Below, one piece after another: positions 34,562 to 51,659 of a stretch of 64,000 nt of DNA. The notes under the pieces were generated by a model. That model made no database searches. It was not told where the DNA came from and saw nothing but the letters and a program-made list of their open reading frames with translations. The DNA lies in IMG/VR virus record IMGVR_UViG_3300032116_000001, positions 248,001 through 312,000 of that record. One strand, given 5' to 3'. Within the stretch, counting starts at the first letter, position 1. Every line of letters starts with the position of its first letter. A program made the position numbers and the translations under genes.

Positions 34562-35788
34562 ATGCCAGAAATATTTCGTATTAGTGGTATGCATATTTCA
34601 AATATAATTTACAAAGGCGACCACGATGAGGCTACAATAAAGCAGATTCAGAATTGCGCTACAGATGAGTATGCGCAGCATGCTGTGCTGTGTGCAGATG
34701 GACACAAAGGTTGGAATATGCCCATTGGCGGCGTAGTGGCTTATGAAAATCACATCAGCCCTGCGGGAGTTGGGTTTGACATTGCGTGTGGTAATAAGGC
34801 CGTGCAGCTCAATGTAACATACGATCAAATTAAGGACGATTTGGCCAAAATCGCTGATGAAATTTTTGCATCTTTATCATTCGGAGTGGGAAGGGTGAAT
34901 AATGAGCGTGTCGAGCATGATGTATTTAATGATGCTGCGTGGCGCAACGTTAACTTTCTTCGTAAAACTCAATCGTTGATGCCTCTTGCTAGAGAACAAC
35001 TTGGTACTATCGGCTCTGGTAATCATTATGTAGATGTGTTCAAAGATGAAAAGGATTGTGTATGGGTGGGTGTTCACTTCGGTAGCCGAGGCCTTGGGCA
35101 CAAGATTGCCACTGAGTTCATTACTCAAGCTGGTGCAAATCCCAATGGTAACATGGATGATCCTCCTTGTCTTTTGGATGTAAACACTTCACTGGGGGAA
35201 GACTATATTCAAGCTATGAATTTAGCAGGACGGTATGCTTATGCAGGAAGAGACTGGGTGTGTCAGAAGGTGGCTTCTATCCTTGGAGCACAGATCGTGG
35301 AAGAGATTCATAATCACCATAATTTTGCATGGAAGGAGAATCATTTTGGCTCGGATTATTGGGTAGTCAGAAAGGGAGCTACTCCCGCGGCTCCTGGGCA
35401 GAAGGGATTTGTCGGCGGATCAATGGGCGAAAACTCTGTGATCCTTGAGGGTGTTGACACTGAAGAATCTGCGAAAATGCTTTATTCTACAGTACATGGC
35501 GCAGGCCGTGTACTGTCAAGAACTCAAGCCGCAGGCAAAACAAGATGGGTGAACGGAGAAAAAATCAGAGTTTCTGAAGGCCTTGTGAACATGGATAATG
35601 TTTTAAAGAATCTTTCCGAAAGTGGTGTAATCCTTCGTGGCGGTGGTGCTGACGAAGCGCCAGAGGTTTACAAGAGATTACCCGAAGTGCTTGCGCATCA
35701 TGGAAATACGATCAAGGTTGTTCACCAATTGAGCCCACTAATTGTGTGTATGGCGGGATCGGAAATCAGAGACCCGTATAAAGATTAA
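34562..35788 (+). CDS. rtcB: RNA 3'-phosphate/5'-OH ligase RtcB
   Basis: ADGHKG..MPIGG, VGFDIACG, LGTIGSGNHY, HFGSRGLG, HNHHN, RKGATPA, HGAGR, DEAPEVYK. Confidence 0.95.
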   Translation: MPEIFRISGMHISNIIYKGDHDEATIKQIQNCATDEYAQHAVLCADGHKGWNMPIGGVVAYENHISPAGVGFDIACGNKAVQLNVTYDQIKDDLAKIADEIFASLSFGVGRVNNERVEHDVFNDAAWRNVNFLRKTQSLMPLAREQLGTIGSGNHYVDVFKDEKDCVWVGVHFGSRGLGHKIATEFITQAGANPNGNMDDPPCLLDVNTSLGEDYIQAMNLAGRYAYAGRDWVCQKVASILGAQIVEEIHNHHNFAWKENHFGSDYWVVRKGATPAAPGQKGFVGGSMGENSVILEGVDTEESAKMLYSTVHGAGRVLSRTQAAGKTRWVNGEKIRVSEGLVNMDNVLKNLSESGVILRGGGADEAPEVYKRLPEVLAHHGNTIKVVHQLSPLIVCMAGSEIRDPYKD

Positions 35789-35798
35789 TTAATGCCGC

Positions 35799-36575
35799 AT
35801 GAGTCATACTAATCCCCAAACACTAGAGCGAAAACACTACGATAATATCAAGGTGTTTTCGCCCGATGATATTTTGATGTTTTTAACTTCAAGAAGGAAG
35901 GCTAACTGGTATCTTAAAAAAGGCATTGCCGAAGATATCATCGGGGATGCGTCGTCAATTAAGCTGAAATTTAAGCCGAATCAGCTTGGCCATCACGGTG
36001 ATGATTTTTATCTTAATGAAAAAGACAATATTTGTGTATGTTGTGGTTCATCTTGTGAACTAACAAGACATCATGTCATACCTAAGTGTTTTAGCAGGTA
36101 TATGCCAGCAAAATACACAAAGCACTCGTCGCACGATGTTCTACTGCTGTGTCGTGTGTGCCACGAAAAGTACGAAGATTCTGCCACTGCTATTAAAATG
36201 CAAATGATTGAACCATTTGCACAAAACTATAGCGAAGTAAGAAAAGCCAGCAGTGCCGCCCGCGCCATACTTAACAACTATGACAATTTAAGCTTTGAAA
36301 GATTTCAACATTATTTTCATATCATTGAAAACTATTTAGATAATGATTTTAGCCAAGAAGCATTAAGAAATTTAGCCAACATAAATAGTGGATATCAAAA
36401 AAATTGGTGGGCCGAGTACATTGCCAATTTAGAAAACCTGGATGAATTTAATAAATTTTGGCGTTCACATTTTATTGAAACATTAAAACCAAAATATCTC
36501 CCGCACGGCTGGAGCGTAGATAGATTGCCAAGTCTTATTTTGGCGGAACAAAAACAAGAGGAATATTCATTATGA
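35799..36575 (+). CDS. HNH-type nuclease resembling the EXD2 C-terminal domain
   Basis: SPDD...RRKANWYLKKG, NICVCCG, RHHVIP, HSSHDVLLLCRVCH. Confidence 0.8.
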   Translation: MSHTNPQTLERKHYDNIKVFSPDDILMFLTSRRKANWYLKKGIAEDIIGDASSIKLKFKPNQLGHHGDDFYLNEKDNICVCCGSSCELTRHHVIPKCFSRYMPAKYTKHSSHDVLLLCRVCHEKYEDSATAIKMQMIEPFAQNYSEVRKASSAARAILNNYDNLSFERFQHYFHIIENYLDNDFSQEALRNLANINSGYQKNWWAEYIANLENLDEFNKFWRSHFIETLKPKYLPHGWSVDRLPSLILAEQKQEEYSL

Positions 36576-37537
36576 ACAATATTATGGTTTTCGGCGGTGG
36601 GTCTCATCCCCAATTAACACATGATATTTGTAAAATAATGTCATTGTCTCCTGGTAAAACTTTAACAACTCGATTTTCTGATGGCGAAACGAGGGTAATC
36701 ATTGAGGATTCGGCTCGTGGGAAAGACGTATTCATCATTCAGCCGACTTGCGCTCCTGTGAATGACACATTTATGGAATTGTTTATCATGGCTGATGCTT
36801 TCAAGCGAGCTTCGGCAAGAACAATTACAGCTGTAATGCCTTATTTTGGATATGCCCGACAAGATAAGAAAGTGAAACCCAGAGAACCAATTACTGCCAG
36901 AATGGTGTGCGATTTTCTTAAAGCCACTGGTGTAAATAGAATAATGGCCATTGACATTCATGCTGAACAAATTCAAGGCTTCTTCGACGGTCCATTTGAC
37001 CATCTTTATGCTGGTCCAATTTTTGCCAATGCCCTGTCATATGTCGAGAAAACTCCAGATGATTATGTGATTGTCAGCCCTGACGCTTCTGGAACGAAAA
37101 GGGCGGAAAATCTTGCCAAACATTTAAATTGTGATTTTGCTATCATCACAAAAAACAGGCCGTCTCCAAATGCTGTTACACCAGGTAAGCTTATTGGTAA
37201 TGTAAAAGGCAAAAAATGTATCATATTGGATGATATGCTTGATACATGTGGAACTATTTGTCAGGCGGCTGACATGCTTATTGATGCTGGAGGCGTTTCT
37301 TCTATGGCTTGTTGCACTCATCCAGTTTTGTCGGGGAATGGAGCGAAAAAAATAGGAGAAAGCCAGTCCATTGAAAAGATTTTGGTTTTAGATACGATAC
37401 CCATTAGTCCACAAAAGCTTAATCAATTAAATAACAAGGCTGAAATTCTATCTTGTGCCGATTTGATTGCGCAATCTATCAAGTTGCATACAAGAGGGGA
37501 ATCTGTCAGCAGTTTGTTTTCGGAGTGGAGAGTTTGA
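36572..37537 (+). CDS. prs: Ribose-phosphate pyrophosphokinase
   Basis: FSDGE, PYFGYARQDKK, DIHAEQIQGFF, VSPDASG, ILDDMLDTCGT. Confidence 0.95.
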   Translation: MNNIMVFGGGSHPQLTHDICKIMSLSPGKTLTTRFSDGETRVIIEDSARGKDVFIIQPTCAPVNDTFMELFIMADAFKRASARTITAVMPYFGYARQDKKVKPREPITARMVCDFLKATGVNRIMAIDIHAEQIQGFFDGPFDHLYAGPIFANALSYVEKTPDDYVIVSPDASGTKRAENLAKHLNCDFAIITKNRPSPNAVTPGKLIGNVKGKKCIILDDMLDTCGTICQAADMLIDAGGVSSMACCTHPVLSGNGAKKIGESQSIEKILVLDTIPISPQKLNQLNNKAEILSCADLIAQSIKLHTRGESVSSLFSEWRV

Positions 37538-38106
37538 GAGTTGGTATTTTCGGTGGGAGCTTTGATCCTCCTCACTTGGGTCACGCGCAAATTCTTTGCG
37601 ATGCTGTTCATGCAATAAATCTTGATAAAGTGATTGTTGTACCCGCGAAAGTGAGTCCTTTTAAAATTGGTTCCACAAAAACACCCCCAGAGCACAGACT
37701 CAGAATGTCTCAGTTGGCATTTCCGAATGCATCGGTAAGTGACATAGAGATAGCTCGCCCAGAACCAAGTTTTTCATATTACACATTGCTTGATTTTCAA
37801 AAGATTATAAACGGGGAATTTTGGTGGATAGGGGGCACTGATTTATTATCAGGGTTAACAAAATGGCACAAAATCGAAGAGATGGCTGGTGCTTGTCGTT
37901 TTGCGATAGGCAATAGGCCTGGGTTTTGCAAGAGGCAGGAAGATGATTTACCTGACTGGCTTGTTAATAAAATTGACTTCTTTGACTCTGATCACGGAAT
38001 TAGCCTGTCTTCCACTGTGATTAGAGAAAATAAAGACATATGGGAATCTGGTCTTGACCCCTTAGTGAGAGAATATATTGCGTCTCAAAATTTATATCTA
38101 CAATAA
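37534..38106 (+). CDS. nadD: Nicotinate-nucleotide adenylyltransferase
   Basis: GIFGGSFDPPHLGH, SPFK, IGGTD...WH, LSSTVIRE, YI..NLY; TTG start overlapping the prs stop. Confidence 0.9.
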   Translation: MRVGIFGGSFDPPHLGHAQILCDAVHAINLDKVIVVPAKVSPFKIGSTKTPPEHRLRMSQLAFPNASVSDIEIARPEPSFSYYTLLDFQKIINGEFWWIGGTDLLSGLTKWHKIEEMAGACRFAIGNRPGFCKRQEDDLPDWLVNKIDFFDSDHGISLSSTVIRENKDIWESGLDPLVREYIASQNLYLQ

Positions 38107-40574: not shown

Positions 40575-40966
40575 GTAAGTATCAGAGTAAATACATCGCT
40601 TTTGTGGTCGGAGCAGGGGAGGGTTGTGATTACACGATGGGTTGTAATCGCAGCCTCTTTGAGATCGTGGCAGAAACAGATGACCAGGCACACAAGGGGC
40701 TGTTTGAACTTCTATTTGGCGAGTGGTGTGAAGATAGAAAATGCTGGGTAAGCTCTGGGTTACATAATCCCGACAATCGTGTTGGCGAGGTGTATCTGTT
40801 CAAGGTTGACTCGTGCTCAGGAAACATCATAAGCGAGATGCTTCAGACAAAAGATATTTTTGACAATTCCGAAAAAGAGCAGATCGAGACAATTCGCCGT
40901 CATAAGTCCGAGGAAGCGGAACGCCTTGAATATGAGCGCCTCAAAGCCAAGTTCGGAGAACAATGA
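40571..40966 (+). CDS. Hypothetical protein
   Basis: GEGCDYTMGC; C-terminal ERLEYERLKAKF. Confidence 0.75.
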   Translation: MSKYQSKYIAFVVGAGEGCDYTMGCNRSLFEIVAETDDQAHKGLFELLFGEWCEDRKCWVSSGLHNPDNRVGEVYLFKVDSCSGNIISEMLQTKDIFDNSEKEQIETIRRHKSEEAERLEYERLKAKFGEQ

Positions 40967-41577
40967 AATCCTATCCATCTATTCCGCAAAGTACAGGCCA
41001 GTCATTTTGTGAGTTTCAGGCGTATGTTTTTGACAAACTTGACGGATCGAACTTGCGCTTTGAATGGGCGCGAAAATCGGGCTGGGGCAAGTTTGGGACA
41101 CGTAATCGGTTATTTGACGAGAGCGATCCTGTATTTGGCTCGGCAATACCCATCTTCTTTGATACTCTTGCCGAGCCCATCGAGAGAGTTGCGAGCATGG
41201 AAAAATGGGAACGTGTCACAGTATATGCCGAGTTCTGGGGCGAGAAAAGTTTTGCTGGCTTACATGAACCTGGTGATCCTAAAGTCCTAACACTCTTTGA
41301 TGTCGCACCTCACAAGAAGGGTTTACTCGGCCCACAAGAGTTTTTGAAGAAGTTCGACCACCTTCCAATTCCTAAGCTTCTAGGCCAGATGAAATGGACA
41401 CGCGACTTAGTACAGCGTGTGCGAGAGGGCGAACTTGAAGGAGTGACTTTTGAGGGAGTGGTTGGCAAGGCTGGCGAGGGTCACAAGCTCATTATGGCCA
41501 AAGCAAAAACTCAAGCCTGGATCGATGCAGTTCGGTCCCGATGTGGCGCAACCGCCGATCAGATAATTGCCAGTTAA
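40963..41577 (+). CDS. RNA ligase (Rnl2-like nucleotidyltransferase domain)
   Basis: DKLDGSN, AEFWG, LFDV, EGVV, AKAK motifs. Confidence 0.8.
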   Translation: MKSYPSIPQSTGQSFCEFQAYVFDKLDGSNLRFEWARKSGWGKFGTRNRLFDESDPVFGSAIPIFFDTLAEPIERVASMEKWERVTVYAEFWGEKSFAGLHEPGDPKVLTLFDVAPHKKGLLGPQEFLKKFDHLPIPKLLGQMKWTRDLVQRVREGELEGVTFEGVVGKAGEGHKLIMAKAKTQAWIDAVRSRCGATADQIIAS

Positions 41578-44302: not shown

Positions 44303-45178
44303 ATGAAGAAAGCCTTTACGCTCATCGAACTTCTTGTTGTTATCGCAATTATTGCTATTTTAGCTGCGATTCTTTTCCCCGTCTTTTCTCAGGCCAAGCT
44401 TGCCGCCAAGAAAACTGTTGGTTTAACCCAAGTTAAACAGATTGGAACATCAATGCAGCTGTATGTCGGCGATTATGATGACATGCTGTTTCCGTACCGA
44501 CTTAATGGTACACAAAACCCCGATTATGCCCGCGCCATTGCTGCTCGGGGGCAGGCGTATGCCGATAGCGTTGTAGGAACTAGTGCAAGAAATGTTATTT
44601 TCTTTAACCAGCTTCTGCAACCATATATGAAAAATAATGATATTTTCAAGGCACCTACCAAGCCAAATGCCTGGGCTGGCGTTGATACTTTCGGTTCTGA
44701 CACTGAACCTGCATTCCGATCTTACGGCGGACAAAACAGCTATGGTGTTAACAATTATGTGTTTACATCTCAGGCGGGCACGTCATCAATCGGCGGGGGG
44801 CTTAATATGGGCGAAATAGCAGAACCAAGCAATACTTTGATTATGGTTGATGCAAGCTATTATAATGTTCTTCCCCGATTCGTTGGAAGACTTAATGGAT
44901 ACACTGGCACATTTAATGTGTGCAGCAGCAGTTACCCGTTGTATTGGAAGAATCTCGGCAACTCCTATCTCTTTAGATGGAATGGTGGACCAAACACGCC
45001 ATCTGACGCTGAAGCTCTGCGATTGATTAATAACCGATATAATGGACCATTGAATATGGTTCAGGGCGACACTAGTTCAAGAGCCGTTGCAGCTAATGCA
45101 ATTCTGAACAACCTGAGAGATCGGGGCGCAGAATCATTTTGGGACCCATACAAACTCGGCAACACTCCATGTCCGTAA
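44303..45178 (+). CDS. Prepilin-type N-terminal cleavage/methylation domain protein (DUF1559-like)
   Basis: [35 protein letters not shown]...Y..DYDD, PYMKN, SYG.N. Confidence 0.92.
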
Positions 45179-45255: not shown

Positions 45256-46017
45256 ATGAGACAGGCTTTTACACTTATTGAATTACTTGTTGTGATCGCA
45301 ATTATCGCGGTTTTGGCTGCAATCCTTTTCCCAGTTTTTTCACAAGCAAAGGAAGCTGCCAAGAAAACTCAGTCGATTTCCAACATGCGCCAACTTGGTA
45401 TTTCCTGGCAGCTTTACAATACTGACTACGATGATACCTTAATGAGAGTTTCTGTGCCTGATGAGCATGGTGTGGTTTATTGGTGGGGATGTTGGGAAGA
45501 AGACGAACAAGAACTTAGAGTTGAGGAAGGCCTTTTATATCCTTATACTCGAAACAATGGTATTTACAAGGATTCATCTTTTAATGCTCAAGTTACGGGA
45601 AGTATGAATTTCTCTGGGTATGGATATAATTATGCTTATTTGAGTCCGTCAACTTATTCTCCTCCGAACTGGGAAGAAAATCCCATTCCCGTAAATGCTT
45701 CATCGATTGAGTTTCCATCTGAGACAGTCGCTTTTGCATCAAATGCGAGACTAAATACATGGGCTTATGACAATCCTGTTTTAGAGGGCACGGGATACTT
45801 AGAGCCACCTTCTTTCGATTTCCCAACATTTCAGGGCCGACACAATAAGCATGGCGTAGTACTTTGGTCTGACGGGCATGCCAAGGCGCAAAAGCCTATT
45901 TTGAGGACTGGGGACTTCGGCTGGGGATATAACGGGGCTCAGTTTGCCCCATATAATCTTGGGGAAATAGATAAAGATGGTAATCTTTCAACTGATGAAC
46001 TTTTTGATTTAGAGTGA
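45256..46017 (+). CDS. Prepilin-type N-terminal cleavage/methylation protein with C-terminal H-X9-DG motif
   Basis: [16 protein letters not shown]...QAKEAAKKT; GYGYN; [16 protein letters not shown]. Confidence 0.92.
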
Positions 46018-46064: not shown

Positions 46065-46422
46065 GGGGGCATAAGGGATCGATTGACGTTGCTATCTTAT
46101 GTTTGCAAGGCGCGGATGTATCCTTGGCCGCGATAACAAAGGATGCAAAAAGTAAATGCGGAAAACAACTTCGCTTTCGCTGCTTAATTAAGCTGGCGCA
46201 TGAACCTGAGACGAGTCTGTAGTTAATGGGGATTGTAAAATAAATCAGACTTAGCTTTGAAACTTCGGCTTGTAGTTGAAAAAGCGATATTAATCAAGCT
46301 GCTGTCAAGAAAGTGCTGGCCTCTAGCCAAAGCTTGACTTAAGATTAATATGAGGAGAACCTTGTGGCGAGCATAGGCTCTGTACGGACAACAAGCGGGT
46401 TCAAATCCCGCTGCCTCCACCA
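46065..46422 (+). ncRNA. ssrA: tmRNA with tag (A)AENNFAFAA
   Basis: 5' GGGGGCA pairs with 3' TGCCTCC-ACCA including the G3-U Ala determinant; T-arm GCGGG-TTCAAAT-CCCGC; resume codon GCG at 46158, TAA at 46185-46187. Confidence 0.95.
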
Positions 46423-46617: not shown

Positions 46618-46691
46618 ATGATTTTTTTTGGGTTTTTAGTCCCAAATTGCCTACTTTTTATTTAAAAATACGTATTATAATTATATTGCTT

Positions 46692-46762
46692 GCTCCATTA
46701 GCTCAATGGTAGAGCTGGGGTCTCTAAAACCTTGGTCGCGGGTTCGATTCCCGTGTGGAGCA
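46692..46762 (+). tRNA. tRNA with CUA anticodon (amber suppressor) no. 1; CCA not encoded
   Basis: Acceptor GCTCCAT/GTGGAGC, D-arm GCTC..GAGC, anticodon arm GGGGT-CTCTAAA-ACCTT (CTA at 46724-46726), T-arm GCGGG-TTCGATT-CCCGT, A73. Confidence 0.85.
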
Positions 46763-46783
46763 GACAATATATTAAAAATACGC

Positions 46784-46858
46784 GCTCTAGTAACTCAGTG
46801 GTAGAGTGGCCCTCTCTAAAAGGGCATGTCGCGGGTTCGAGTCCCGCCTAGAGCGCCA
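46784..46858 (+). tRNA. tRNA with CUA anticodon (amber suppressor) no. 2
   Basis: Acceptor GCTCTAG/CTAGAGC, D-arm ACTC..GAGT, anticodon arm GCCCT-CTCTAAA-AGGGC (CTA at 46816-46818), T-arm GCGGG-TTCGAGT-CCCGC, G73-CCA. Confidence 0.93.
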
Positions 46859-47314: not shown

Positions 47315-47390
47315 GGGTCAGTAGCTCAGTTGGTAGAGCAGCGGTCTTTTAAACCGCGGGTCGCGGGTTCGAGCCCCGCCTGGCCCACCA
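47315..47390 (+). tRNA. tRNA-Lys(UUU)
   Basis: GGGTCAG/CTGGCCC-ACCA; anticodon arm GCGGT-CTTTTAA-ACCGC. Confidence 0.96.
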
Positions 47391-47401
47391 GAATTTTTCA
47401 T

Positions 47402-47477
47402 GGAGGGATAGCTCAGTCGGTAGAGCAGCTGACTCTTAATCAGCATGTCGTGGGTTCGATCCCCACTCCCTTCACCA
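47402..47477 (+). tRNA. tRNA-Lys(CUU)
   Basis: GGAGGGA/TCCCTTC-ACCA; anticodon arm GCTGA-CTCTTAA-TCAGC. Confidence 0.96.
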
Positions 47478-49853: not shown

Positions 49854-51659
49854 ATGAACATTGTTATTGCTCAATTAGAACTCCGCACGGGCGACCTATA
49901 CGGGAATACTGCGAAAATTATCAACACCGTGGAAGAATCAAGCGACAATTCCGTGATTATATTTCCAGAACTTGCTGTCACTGGGTATAATTGCGGGTCG
50001 CTTTTTGAAAGTGACGACTTTATCAATGACGCCCTTGAGTGTGTGGATCAAATTGTTAAAGCGACTAAGGGCACAAACAAAACTGCTATTTTTGGAGCAC
50101 CGAGATTTGCCACGCCTGATAGAGAACCTAACGGTAACATCAGACTCCACAACAGTGCTATGATCGCAAGAGACGGAAAACTTCTTGCTGTTTACGACAA
50201 GATTTTGTTGGCTAATGATTTTCAGCATGAAGATCGAAAATATTTTATTCCTGGTGAGAATCTATTCACATTCCAGGTTGGCGATCAGGTGGCGGGCGTT
50301 CTTATCTGTGAGGATATCTGGGCACCCGATCATGACCGAAACTTGGTTGCAGAGCTTAAAGCCCTCAATCCTGATCTTTCCATGATCTTTTGCATCAACT
50401 ATAGTTACTACACTTATGAGAAGCATTCAGCTCGTCAAAATTTGCTTTCTAATCTTGCACGAGATCATAAAGTAGGAATTTTTTATGTTAACGCCGTGGG
50501 GGTGGGAGATATTGTTAAGAACTTTATGGTTTATGACGGTAGGTCGATGGTTTATGATGCCTTGGGCAATCTGTTTGACATCCTTCCGTCTTTCGAAGAA
50601 AAAATTATATCTTGCTCCTTAAAAAAGGGGAAAATTTTCAATTGGTTTGACAATGATTGGGATGGAATTGACAAGCGTAATCAAAGGAGATTTCTATATT
50701 CAAAGAATGATAAATACCAGACTATCTGGTGTGCCCTGAAATATGCTTTGCGTCAGTTGATGGACCAAACTGGCATAGAGCGTGCCCAAGTTCACGTTTC
50801 TGGTGGCATAGACAGCGCCGTTGTGGCAGCGCTTTGCGCCAAGGCGCTTGGGCCTGATCGTTGTGTTTTCATTAGTAATCCCTCCCAATATAATGGAGAT
50901 ATTACTAAAAATAATGCTCAGTACATTGCTGACAAGCTCGGGGTCCCCCTGTATTGGATGCCCGTGGGCGATCTTACAAATCATGCCAAGTCGATTTTCC
51001 AAAATGCTTACTTGGAATCTGCAGAAGATGGTTGTCGCATGCCCCTTGCCAGCGAAGAGCTTCCCCAGATGGTGGACACTACATTAGATGCTGTAGGTCG
51101 AACATTGCTTGGCCTGTCAATCTGTCATTATTTTAAATCGGCTATTATTTCCACGGGCAATCACACTGAAAATGTACTTGGATGGTTTACTTTCCATGAC
51201 GTGGGCAGCGTGGGTCTTTTCCAGCCGCTTGGTGACCTGACAAAATCAGAGGTAAATTGCTTGGCGAAATATATCAATGAAATATATGAGGATGAAATCA
51301 TTCCAATCAATCTTTATGATGGAAGCACCAAGCCCATGGCTGAGCTTGCAGACAGTAGCGAAGACCCATTTGATTATCCTCTGTATTCTGGAATTTGTGC
51401 CGAAATTATCCGACGCAGGATGACTGTAAGAGACCTGGAAGAAGCCTATGATAATCACACGTTAACTACTGATTATTTTTGCGAATGCGACCCATACAAT
51501 TATCCCAAGGATGTTTTTGTGTCGGCGGCACGTGATGCCTGGAATCGATCAAAGAGGAGTGTATTTAAGTGCGCACAATCATCCCCAACACTTATTGTTT
51601 CTCCCAGAAGCAGAGGCTTTAGTTCAAGAGAGACAATTTTAAACTACTATAATTCTTAA
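49854..51659 (+). CDS. nadE: Glutamine-dependent NAD+ synthetase
   Basis: Nitrilase-fold FPELAVTGY, YDK..L, ICEDIW; synthetase SGGIDSAV, STGNHTE, LGDLTKSEV, PMAEL. Confidence 0.93.
   Translation: MNIVIAQLELRTGDLYGNTAKIINTVEESSDNSVIIFPELAVTGYNCGSLFESDDFINDALECVDQIVKATKGTNKTAIFGAPRFATPDREPNGNIRLHNSAMIARDGKLLAVYDKILLANDFQHEDRKYFIPGENLFTFQVGDQVAGVLICEDIWAPDHDRNLVAELKALNPDLSMIFCINYSYYTYEKHSARQNLLSNLARDHKVGIFYVNAVGVGDIVKNFMVYDGRSMVYDALGNLFDILPSFEEKIISCSLKKGKIFNWFDNDWDGIDKRNQRRFLYSKNDKYQTIWCALKYALRQLMDQTGIERAQVHVSGGIDSAVVAALCAKALGPDRCVFISNPSQYNGDITKNNAQYIADKLGVPLYWMPVGDLTNHAKSIFQNAYLESAEDGCRMPLASEELPQMVDTTLDAVGRTLLGLSICHYFKSAIISTGNHTENVLGWFTFHDVGSVGLFQPLGDLTKSEVNCLAKYINEIYEDEIIPINLYDGSTKPMAELADSSEDPFDYPLYSGICAEIIRRRMTVRDLEEAYDNHTLTTDYFCECDPYNYPKDVFVSAARDAWNRSKRSVFKCAQSSPTLIVSPRSRGFSSRETILNYYNS

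What the first reader, a model, noticed from the sequence alone, without database searches (positions are those of the whole stretch)
47315..47390. tRNA-Lys(UUU) with a U31-A39 pair, a possible anticodon-nuclease-resistant variant
The anticodon arm is GCGGT-CTTTTAA-ACCGC, giving U31-A39. Typical bacterial tRNA-Lys, and the neighbouring Lys(CUU), have A31-U39. As I recall, the same inversion is what makes phage T5 tRNA-Lys resistant to the PARIS nuclease AriB; this needs verifying. The only sense tRNAs in the window are Lys, a common target of defence nucleases.
Basis: partly seen in the sequence, partly recalled or inferred. Interest (0 to 1): 0.6.

Follow-up and report, generated by a model that had tools for sequence, protein, structure and literature searches.

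The report
Huge-phage lysine tRNA with T5-like stem
A giant freshwater phage carries a normal-looking lysine tRNA whose anticodon stem has the same rare base-pair flip that protects phage T5's lysine tRNA from a bacterial defence nuclease, but nothing here shows that the flip serves that purpose in this phage.

Summary
Window 47315-47390 (+) is a canonical tRNA-Lys(UUU) with the anticodon arm GCGGU-CUUUUAA-ACCGC (U31-A39). The neighbouring tRNA-Lys(CUU) has A31-U39.

The pair is rare. Only 71 loci in 185,579 bacterial species genomes have it, and 2 of 80 sampled viral tRNA-Lys. The stated refutation test is not met. The likely host lineage is Fimbriimonadaceae (Armatimonadota), inferred from pilin-like genes, the tmRNA tag and near-identical tRNAs. 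It uses C31-G39 or A31-U39, with 0 U-A among 150 tRNA-Lys of that phylum.

The resistance reading remains unproven and is weakened:
- The window is part of a 379-kb phage with about 33 tRNAs, including a second Lys(UUU) copy.
- U31-A39 is this phage's commonest 31-39 pair (13 of 34).
- All stems of this tRNA differ from the host's, not just the anticodon stem.
- AriB was not found in 81 host-family genomes.
- The host tRNA-Lys lacks AriB's UAAU motif.
- The stem keeps the CNG pair that P2-OLD cuts.
- Codon supply explains carriage: AAA is 64% of Lys codons in the phage and 34% in the host.

An RtcB RNA ligase nearby is mild support for tRNA damage as a pressure. Verdict: a new member of a known kind, of modest interest.

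The parts
47315..47390 (+). tRNA-Lys(UUU), anticodon arm GCGGU-CUUUUAA-ACCGC (U31-A39; U36AAACC41), U16-U17 in the D loop, A73, encoded CCA
   Evidence: identical in four other assemblies
47402..47477 (+). tRNA-Lys(CUU), arm GCUGA-CUCUUAA-UCAGC (A31-U39); this arm is identical to that of the host-family tRNA-Lys(CUU)
46065..46422 (+). Phage-encoded tmRNA, tag AENNFAFAA; context and host marker
   Evidence: host-family tags ANNNFAYAA, ANNNYAFAA and similar; exact 340-nt contigs in four metatranscriptomes
46691..46763 (+). tRNA with anticodon CUA (amber suppressor type), first of two; context
46784..46858 (+). tRNA with anticodon CUA (amber suppressor type), second of two; context
34562..35788 (+). 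RtcB RNA ligase (the tRNA-repair type), 11.5 kb upstream; context for tRNA damage as a selective pressure
   Evidence: Pfam PF01139, E 1.4e-70
44303..45178 (+). Pilin-like protein with an N-terminal methylation motif; 52-73% identical over its full length to chromosomal genes of Fimbriimonadaceae; used as a host marker
45256..46017 (+). Second pilin-like protein with an N-terminal methylation motif

Best explanation
This is a functional elongator tRNA-Lys(UUU). It is one of two diverged copies in a roughly 380-420 kb freshwater phage that most likely infects Fimbriimonadaceae (Armatimonadota). Its main role is to decode AAA for an AT-rich phage genome in a GC-rich host that prefers AAG, as part of a near-complete phage tRNA set. 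The U31-A39 pair, with G29-C41 and G30-C40 behind it, is a feature of this tRNA's own lineage. The host does not share it, and nothing shows it to be an adaptation. By sequence alone the tRNA would be predicted to escape an E. coli-B185-type AriB, because it has A39 and C41 as T5 does. Shown: the gene, its fold, its arm, its rarity, the difference from the host lineage, and the codon bias. Inferred: the host, expression, charging, and neutrality of the pair.
For: Canonical tRNA. The phage has 34 ARAGORN tRNA calls, 32 over the Rfam cut-off, covering 19 amino acids, plus a tmRNA. Phage GC is 40.6% with AAA at 64% of Lys codons; host-family loci have GC 58% with AAA at 34%. U31-A39 is the commonest 31-39 pair in the phage (13 of 34). 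The same stem, GCGGU/ACCGC, occurs in the tRNA-Ser(UGA) of both phage and host, and in host Leu(CAA) and Trp(CCA). Against host tRNA-Lys(UUU), identity is 75-79%, with changes in the acceptor stem (4 of 7), T stem (2 of 5) and anticodon stem (3 of 5), so this is general divergence and not a targeted flip. AriB was not found in 81 host-family genomes. Host tRNA-Lys reads UAAG, not UAAU. The stem keeps the paired CNG motif (C28-G-G / C40-C-G) that P2-OLD cuts.
Against: The pair is rare: 71 loci in 185,579 species genomes, 0 of 150 in Armatimonadota, and 2 of 80 in an unselected viral sample. Positions 29-41 are identical to the experimentally AriB-resistant T5 tRNA. The neighbouring Lys(CUU) keeps the host's arm exactly, while Lys(UUU) and Thr(UGU) both changed from host C31-G39 to U31-A39. 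U-A pairs are enriched in the phage over the host (13 of 34 versus 7 of 44, p=0.036). The phage also carries RtcB and an Rnl-type ligase, which suggests that tRNA breakage matters to it.
Confidence: 0.6

Rival explanations
1. Nuclease-evasion variant. The anticodon stem of Lys(UUU), and of Thr(UGU), has been selected to differ from the host's so that a host anticodon-stem nuclease (Toprim/OLD/AriB-like or unknown) cannot cut it. This keeps AAA decoding alive after the host tRNA is destroyed. RtcB acts as a second line of repair.
For: The 29-41 string is the same as in AriB-resistant T5 tRNA-Lys. The pair is absent from the host phylum sample. Lys(UUU) and Thr(UGU), the two best AriB substrates in E. 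coli, are the ones that changed from host C-G to U-A, while Lys(CUU) and Arg(UCU) keep the host arms. The second copy has C16, which is T5's third resistance change. RtcB and an Rnl-type ligase are present. U31-A39 tRNA-Lys recurs in unrelated phage tRNA arrays.
Against: No AriB in 81 host-family genomes. Host tRNA-Lys lacks the UAAU motif, so the E. coli rule does not carry over. The paired CNG motif cut by P2-OLD is present. The window copy has U16, the sensitive state. All stems have diverged, not just this one. Other UAAG tRNAs of the phage (Arg-UCU, Ile, Thr-GGU) are unchanged. That the five differences between the two copies spare the 17-nt arm is expected by chance, about 0.28 by my own calculation, (59/76)^5, from the sequences.
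Confidence: 0.25
2. Horizontal origin. The tRNA was captured from, or descends from, a lineage in which U31-A39 is the native state, and the pair is simply inherited.
For: Native-looking tRNA-Lys(UUU) with the same arm occur in Hydrogenothermaceae, Planctomycetota and a group of rumen Clostridia. In the Clostridia, positions 8-65 match this tRNA except for one base, and the gene sits in tight bacterial tRNA arrays.
Against: The acceptor stems are entirely different. D and T arms of this type are common, so core identity is weak evidence. The phage is a freshwater one, its other host markers point to Fimbriimonadaceae, and tRNAs are too short for a reliable tree.
Confidence: 0.1
3. Non-functional or decoy tRNA: not charged, acting only as a competitor for a nuclease, or a decaying duplicate.
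For: There are two copies. The PARIS paper raises competition as a possibility.
Against: The cloverleaf is intact. UUU and A73 are present; these are the known LysRS identity elements (established knowledge, not tested here). CCA is encoded, and the Rfam score is among the best in the genome. The two copies differ by compensatory changes in the T stem, which indicates purifying selection on the structure.
Confidence: 0.05

Closest known systems
Phage T5 tRNA-Lys(UUU), the PARIS (AriB) suppressor (PMC11464382, PMC12409363)
   Same: A phage-encoded tRNA-Lys(UUU) in a large tRNA set. It has the identical G29-G30-U31 / CUUUUAA / A39-C40-C41, that is U36AAACC41. The second genomic copy also shares C16.
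   Different: The window copy has U16-U17. Positions 27-28 and 42-43, the acceptor stem, the D loop and the T arm all differ. The host is E. coli for T5 and probably Fimbriimonadaceae here. In T5 the host tRNA has the UAAU target and PARIS is present; here the host tRNA has UAAG and AriB was not found. Resistance was shown for T5 and has not been tested here.
Phage tRNAs proposed to evade anticodon nucleases (van den Berg et al. 2023, PMC10264068); T5 tRNA-Tyr against retron Ec78 PtuAB
   Same: The general idea that phage tRNAs differ from the host's near the cleavage site.
   Different: That survey concerns anticodon-loop changes. Here the loop is identical to the host's and only the stem differs.
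Phage tRNA-Thr(UGU) resistant to P2-OLD (PMC12445682)
   Same: An anticodon-stem sequence decides sensitivity to a Toprim nuclease.
   Different: Resistance there needs loss of the paired CNG motif and a shortened stem. This tRNA-Lys keeps a 5-bp stem with C28-G-G / C40-C-G, so by that rule it would be a substrate.
T4 Pnk/Rnl1 repair of PrrC-cut tRNA-Lys
   Same: The phage carries RNA-repair ligases (RtcB and an Rnl type) alongside tRNA-Lys.
   Different: This is a different ligase family. No PrrC, Stp or Pnk was examined here. Repair and evasion are separate strategies.

Membership tests
Bacterial-type elongator tRNA-Lys(UUU) | Cloverleaf with 7/4/5/5-bp stems and a 7-nt anticodon loop reading UUU | tested here: met
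   ARAGORN, Rfam 73.1 bits against a cut-off of 29, minimum-energy fold is the cloverleaf
Bacterial-type elongator tRNA-Lys(UUU) | LysRS identity elements (U35, U36, A73) and a 3' CCA | tested here: met
   Read directly from the sequence. That these are the identity elements is established knowledge, not tested here.
Bacterial-type elongator tRNA-Lys(UUU) | Expressed, modified and aminoacylated | not testable with these tools
   Metatranscriptome contigs cover the tmRNA but not the tRNA. Standard RNA-seq libraries capture tRNAs poorly.
T5-type AriB-resistant tRNA-Lys | A39 in place of U39, with the 31-39 pair swapped (Mut1) | tested here: met
T5-type AriB-resistant tRNA-Lys | C41 in place of A41 at the cleavage site (Mut2) | tested here: met
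T5-type AriB-resistant tRNA-Lys | C16 in place of U16 in the D loop (Mut3) | tested here: not met
   The window copy has U16-U17. The copy at genome 36990-37065 has C16-A17.
T5-type AriB-resistant tRNA-Lys | Not cleaved by activated AriB; rescues infection or growth in PARIS+ cells | not testable with these tools
   Needs an in vitro cleavage or rescue assay
T5-type AriB-resistant tRNA-Lys | The host lineage carries PARIS and a sensitive tRNA-Lys (UAAU, C40|A41) | tested here: not met
   PF14491 was not found in 81 host-family genomes, while the control genomes gave hits. Host tRNA-Lys reads UAAGGC or UAAGCC. The host assignment is itself inferred.
P2-OLD-resistant phage tRNA | Loss of the paired CNG motif and a shortened anticodon stem | tested here: not met
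   C28-G29-G30 and C40-C41-G42 are present in a 5-bp stem

The most novel reading that the evidence does not exclude
The stretch from RtcB to the two Lys tRNAs (RtcB, tmRNA, two CUA tRNAs, Lys-UUU, Lys-CUU) is a translation-rescue kit of a huge Armatimonadota phage. [quoted passage not shown] The C31-G39 to U31-A39 change in just these two phage tRNAs would be the evasion step. That would be a case of convergence with T5 in a phylum where no phage-host biology is known.
Probability: 0.12. Interest if true: 0.6.

Novelty: new member of a known kind. Interest (0 to 1): 0.3.

Why it matters
If the stem flip does protect the tRNA, it would show that the T5 solution to anticodon-stem nucleases has arisen independently in an uncultivated huge phage of a little-studied phylum. 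It would also point to a tRNA-cutting defence in Fimbriimonadaceae. Two by-products are useful as things stand. One is a well-supported host prediction for a widespread freshwater huge phage. The other is a rough census showing that U31-A39 in tRNA-Lys(UUU) is confined to a few bacterial lineages and to scattered phage tRNA arrays. That makes the pair a cheap marker to screen for candidate resistant tRNAs.

Tried and rejected
- An exact-arm scan of IMG/VR, with N at positions 31 and 39, found only one other contig (L033), and that one has A31-U39.
- A GroEL-based search for relatives in IMG/VR gave only hits at 50% identity or less, so these are not relatives. The GroEL relatives at 68-71% lie on short contigs without the tRNA region, and one has no DNA on hand.
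- tblastn of all phage ORFs against the 58 viral loci that carry U31-A39 tRNA-Lys found only scattered weak hits. I took the ORFs in the tRNA regions for homing endonucleases, but did not annotate them. These phages are therefore unrelated to this one.
I used an unconstrained scan as an unbiased sample instead.
- The rumen Clostridia were considered as host because their tRNA core is nearly identical. I rejected this because the phage is found in freshwater and every named homologue of its pilin-like protein but one is from Fimbriimonadaceae. ARAGORN returned no usable tmRNA tag for those genomes to compare.
- An AT-drift explanation for U-A pairs was rejected. The phage's anticodon stems are about as GC-rich as the host's (0.66 against 0.69).
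- A first pattern with a mis-registered variable loop found nothing and was corrected.
- The closest GenBank phage tRNA-Lys (Stenotrophomonas phage RAS14, 88% identical) has A31-U39.
- PrrC/RloC (Pfam AAA_13) and OLD-family searches of the host family were not run. AAA_13 is not specific to anticodon nucleases.

Full report
**What is there.** ARAGORN finds five RNA genes in a row on the + strand of the window. They are a tmRNA (46065-46422, tag AENNFAFAA), two tRNAs with anticodon CUA (46691-46763 and 46784-46858), tRNA-Lys(UUU) (47315-47390) and tRNA-Lys(CUU) (47402-47477). Rfam confirms all five. The Lys(UUU) gene scores 73.1 bits. The sequence folds into the canonical cloverleaf as its minimum-energy structure. 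Its anticodon arm is GCGGU-CUUUUAA-ACCGC, so U31 pairs with A39 and positions 36-41 read UAAACC. A73 and CCA are present. The Lys(CUU) neighbour has GCUGA-CUCUUAA-UCAGC, which is A31-U39. The gene is identical in four other assemblies of the same phage.

**What the window belongs to.** The window is bases 248001-312000 of a 378,848-bp virus record. The same GroEL protein occurs on contigs of up to 421 kb. The stretch is held by freshwater metagenomes of many studies. Genes in the window include:
- RecD2 helicase, a ClpX-like ATPase, ThyX, an ATP-dependent DNA ligase and GroEL
- NAD synthase, a PRPP-synthetase-like protein and an NMNAT-like protein
- glycosyltransferases and an RtcB RNA ligase

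On the whole genome ARAGORN tRNAs, for 19 amino acids, with Asn missing. Of these, 32 pass the Rfam tRNA cut-off. They include a second tRNA-Lys(UUU) at genome 36990-37065. That copy has the same anticodon arm but C16-A17 in the D loop and a compensatory change in the T stem. So 'only Lys tRNAs' is an effect of where the window was cut.

**Is the recalled T5 fact right?** Yes.
- PMC12409363 places the AriB cut at C40|A41 within U36AAUCA41. It gives T5 as U36AAACC41.
- The same paper shows that U39->A abolishes cleavage and that A41->C strongly inhibits it, and that U16->C impairs it.
- Restoring the E. coli site in the T5 tRNA does not restore cleavage, so other determinants exist.

The T5 gene taken from GenBank reads CUGGU-CUUUUAA-ACCAU. 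Positions 29-31 and 39-41 are therefore the same in T5 and here.

**How rare is the pair?**
- A scan of one genome for each of 185,579 bacterial and archaeal species looked for the canonical Lys D arm followed by U31, CUUUUAA and A39. It found 71 loci.
- Most of these are in Hydrogenothermaceae and other Aquificota, or in Planctomycetota. Five are in rumen Clostridia, where the gene sits in tight bacterial tRNA arrays.
- A few hits look like phage DNA inside MAGs, for example L034 with 14 spaced tRNAs and a CUA tRNA.
- Nearly all 71 share GGU...ACC.
- In two phylum samples, 51 of 61 and 150 of 301 genomes match the unconstrained pattern. The bacterial frequency is therefore of the order of 1 in 1,500-2,000 species. 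This is a rough figure.
- In IMG/VR, 58 contigs have the pair. Many are phage tRNA arrays with unrelated acceptor stems and no protein kinship to this phage.
- An unconstrained scan gave an unselected sample of 80 viral contigs: A-U 53, C-G 14, G-C 10, U-A 2 and G.U 1.

The pair is thus a small minority in phages too, though apparently commoner there than in bacteria.

**Host lineage.** Four lines of evidence agree.
- The pilin-like protein at 44303-45178 has full-length homologues of 52-73% identity on chromosome-sized contigs. Every named one but one (a Chlorobia MAG) is named Fimbriimonadaceae or Fimbriimonas. They lie beside housekeeping genes.
- In 25 genomes of that family the tmRNA tag is a 9-residue ANNNFAYAA, ANNNYAFAA, ADNNFAYAA or AENQYAYAA at the same offset. 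The phage tag is AENNFAFAA.
- Against a complete genome of the family (G375), phage tRNA-Arg(UCU) is 96% identical, Val(GAC) 93% and Arg(GCG) 88%. Lys(CUU) is 83% identical with the same anticodon arm.
- The habitat is fresh water.

I take Fimbriimonadaceae (Armatimonadota) as the likely host, with confidence of about 0.75.

**The refutation test.**
- Fimbriimonas ginsengisoli has UCGGA...UCCGU (A31-U39).
- The family genomes have ACGCC...GGCGU or GCGGC...GCCGU (C31-G39).
- By my tally of the family members listed, plus G071, the counts are 15 C-G, 2 A-U and 0 U-A.
- Over 301 genomes of the phylum, the 150 listed tRNA-Lys(UUU) are 81 C-G, 69 A-U and 0 U-A. Four further matches were not listed.

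**Why the resistance reading is still weak.**
- U31-A39 is the commonest 31-39 pair in this phage: 13 of 34 tRNAs, among them Ser(UGA), Thr(UGU), both Gln, Cys, Trp, Phe and both CUA tRNAs. The host genome has 7 of 44. The excess is modest (p=0.036).
- The stem GCGGU/ACCGC is a stock module. The host uses it in Ser(UGA), Leu(CAA) and Trp(CCA).
- Phage and host tRNA-Lys(UUU) are 75-79% identical. They differ in the acceptor stem (4 of 7), the T stem (2 of 5) and the anticodon stem (3 of 5). This is an old, generally diverged tRNA, not a host copy with one edited pair.
- AriB (DUF4435) was not found in 81 genomes of the host family, although the search worked on control genomes. The host tRNA-Lys has G39, as T5's own resistant Thr(UGU) and Asn(GUU) do. 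It therefore lacks the UAAU motif.
[quoted passage not shown] This tRNA has C28-G-G paired with C40-C-G, so it is not generally proof against Toprim nucleases.
- The window copy keeps U16.
- The two copies share the arm, but with only five differences between them this is expected by chance about 28% of the time. That figure is my own calculation, (59/76)^5, from the sequences.

**The ordinary explanation.** The phage has 40.6% GC and uses AAA for 64% of its Lys codons. Host-family loci have 58% GC and use AAA for 34%. A large, AT-rich phage with a near-complete tRNA set and two Lys(UUU) genes fits codon supply.

**What speaks for tRNA damage as a pressure.**
- RtcB (34562-35788, E 1.4e-70) lies 11.5 kb upstream.
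- An Rnl-type RNA ligase lies at genome 377695-378387.
- A weak RNA-ligase-like ORF lies at 40963-41577.
- Lys(UUU) and Thr(UGU), the two best AriB substrates in E. coli, are among the five phage tRNAs that have U-A where the host has another pair. In both of them the host pair is C-G. Lys(CUU) and Arg(UCU) keep the host arms.

This is suggestive, not more. Other UAAG tRNAs of the phage are unchanged.

**Verdict.** The stated refutation is not met, and the function is not shown. The most likely reading (0.6) is a supply tRNA whose stem flip is a lineage trait. An evasion variant aimed at an unknown host nuclease remains possible (0.25). This is a new member of a known kind.

Noticed in passing
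window 46065-46422: The phage-encoded tmRNA has a tag (AENNFAFAA) close to the 9-residue tags of Fimbriimonadaceae. Exact 340-nt contigs that match the gene's limits, at depth 27-57, occur in four freshwater metatranscriptomes of different studies. The flanks are absent from those contigs, which suggests a stable, abundant RNA.
   Followed up: partly
window 46691-46763 and 46784-46858: There are two tRNAs with anticodon CUA next to the tmRNA. Coding density under the standard code is already 0.9 or more over most of the genome, and reading TAG as sense adds little. TAG is the rarest stop (29 of 282 long ORFs). Which amino acid these tRNAs carry was not resolved.
   Followed up: partly
window 34562-35788; genome 377695-378387; window 40963-41577: An RtcB RNA ligase, an Rnl-type RNA ligase and a weak RNA-ligase-like ORF are present. 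Together they give the phage a possible tRNA-repair capacity.
   Followed up: partly
window 44303-45178 and 45256-46017: Two pilin-like proteins with an N-terminal methylation motif sit in the phage. The first is 52-73% identical to chromosomal Fimbriimonadaceae genes. They are useful for host prediction, but their role in the phage is unknown.
   Followed up: partly
window 36572-37537, 37453-38106, 49854-51659: A PRPP-synthetase-like protein, an NMNAT-like nucleotidyltransferase and a glutamine-dependent NAD synthase are present. They may form an NAD-restoring gene set of the kind phages use against NAD-depleting defences.
   Followed up: no
genome 36990-37065 (outside the window): This is a second tRNA-Lys(UUU) with the same anticodon arm. 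It has C16-A17 and a compensatory T-stem change. C16 is the third T5-type change that impairs AriB.
   Followed up: partly
whole genome: The tRNA set covers 19 amino acids, but no tRNA-Asn was called. In E. coli, tRNA-Asn(GUU) is one of the AriB targets.
   Followed up: no
L052, L086, L087, L090, L091 (rumen Clostridia MAGs): These carry a native tRNA-Lys(UUU) with U31-A39 and an unusual A1-U72 acceptor end, in tight tRNA arrays. Positions 8-65 match the phage tRNA except for one base.
   Followed up: partly
L035-L104: Hydrogenothermaceae and other Aquificota, and several Planctomycetota families, appear to use U31-A39 natively in tRNA-Lys(UUU). Almost all have G29-G30/C40-C41 behind it.
   Followed up: partly
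contig of GroEL relative P0004 (no DNA held): A related phage contig has the same gene order and also carries RtcB, a Tad2-like protein, a GIY-YIG endonuclease and a short RF-1-like ORF.
   Followed up: no
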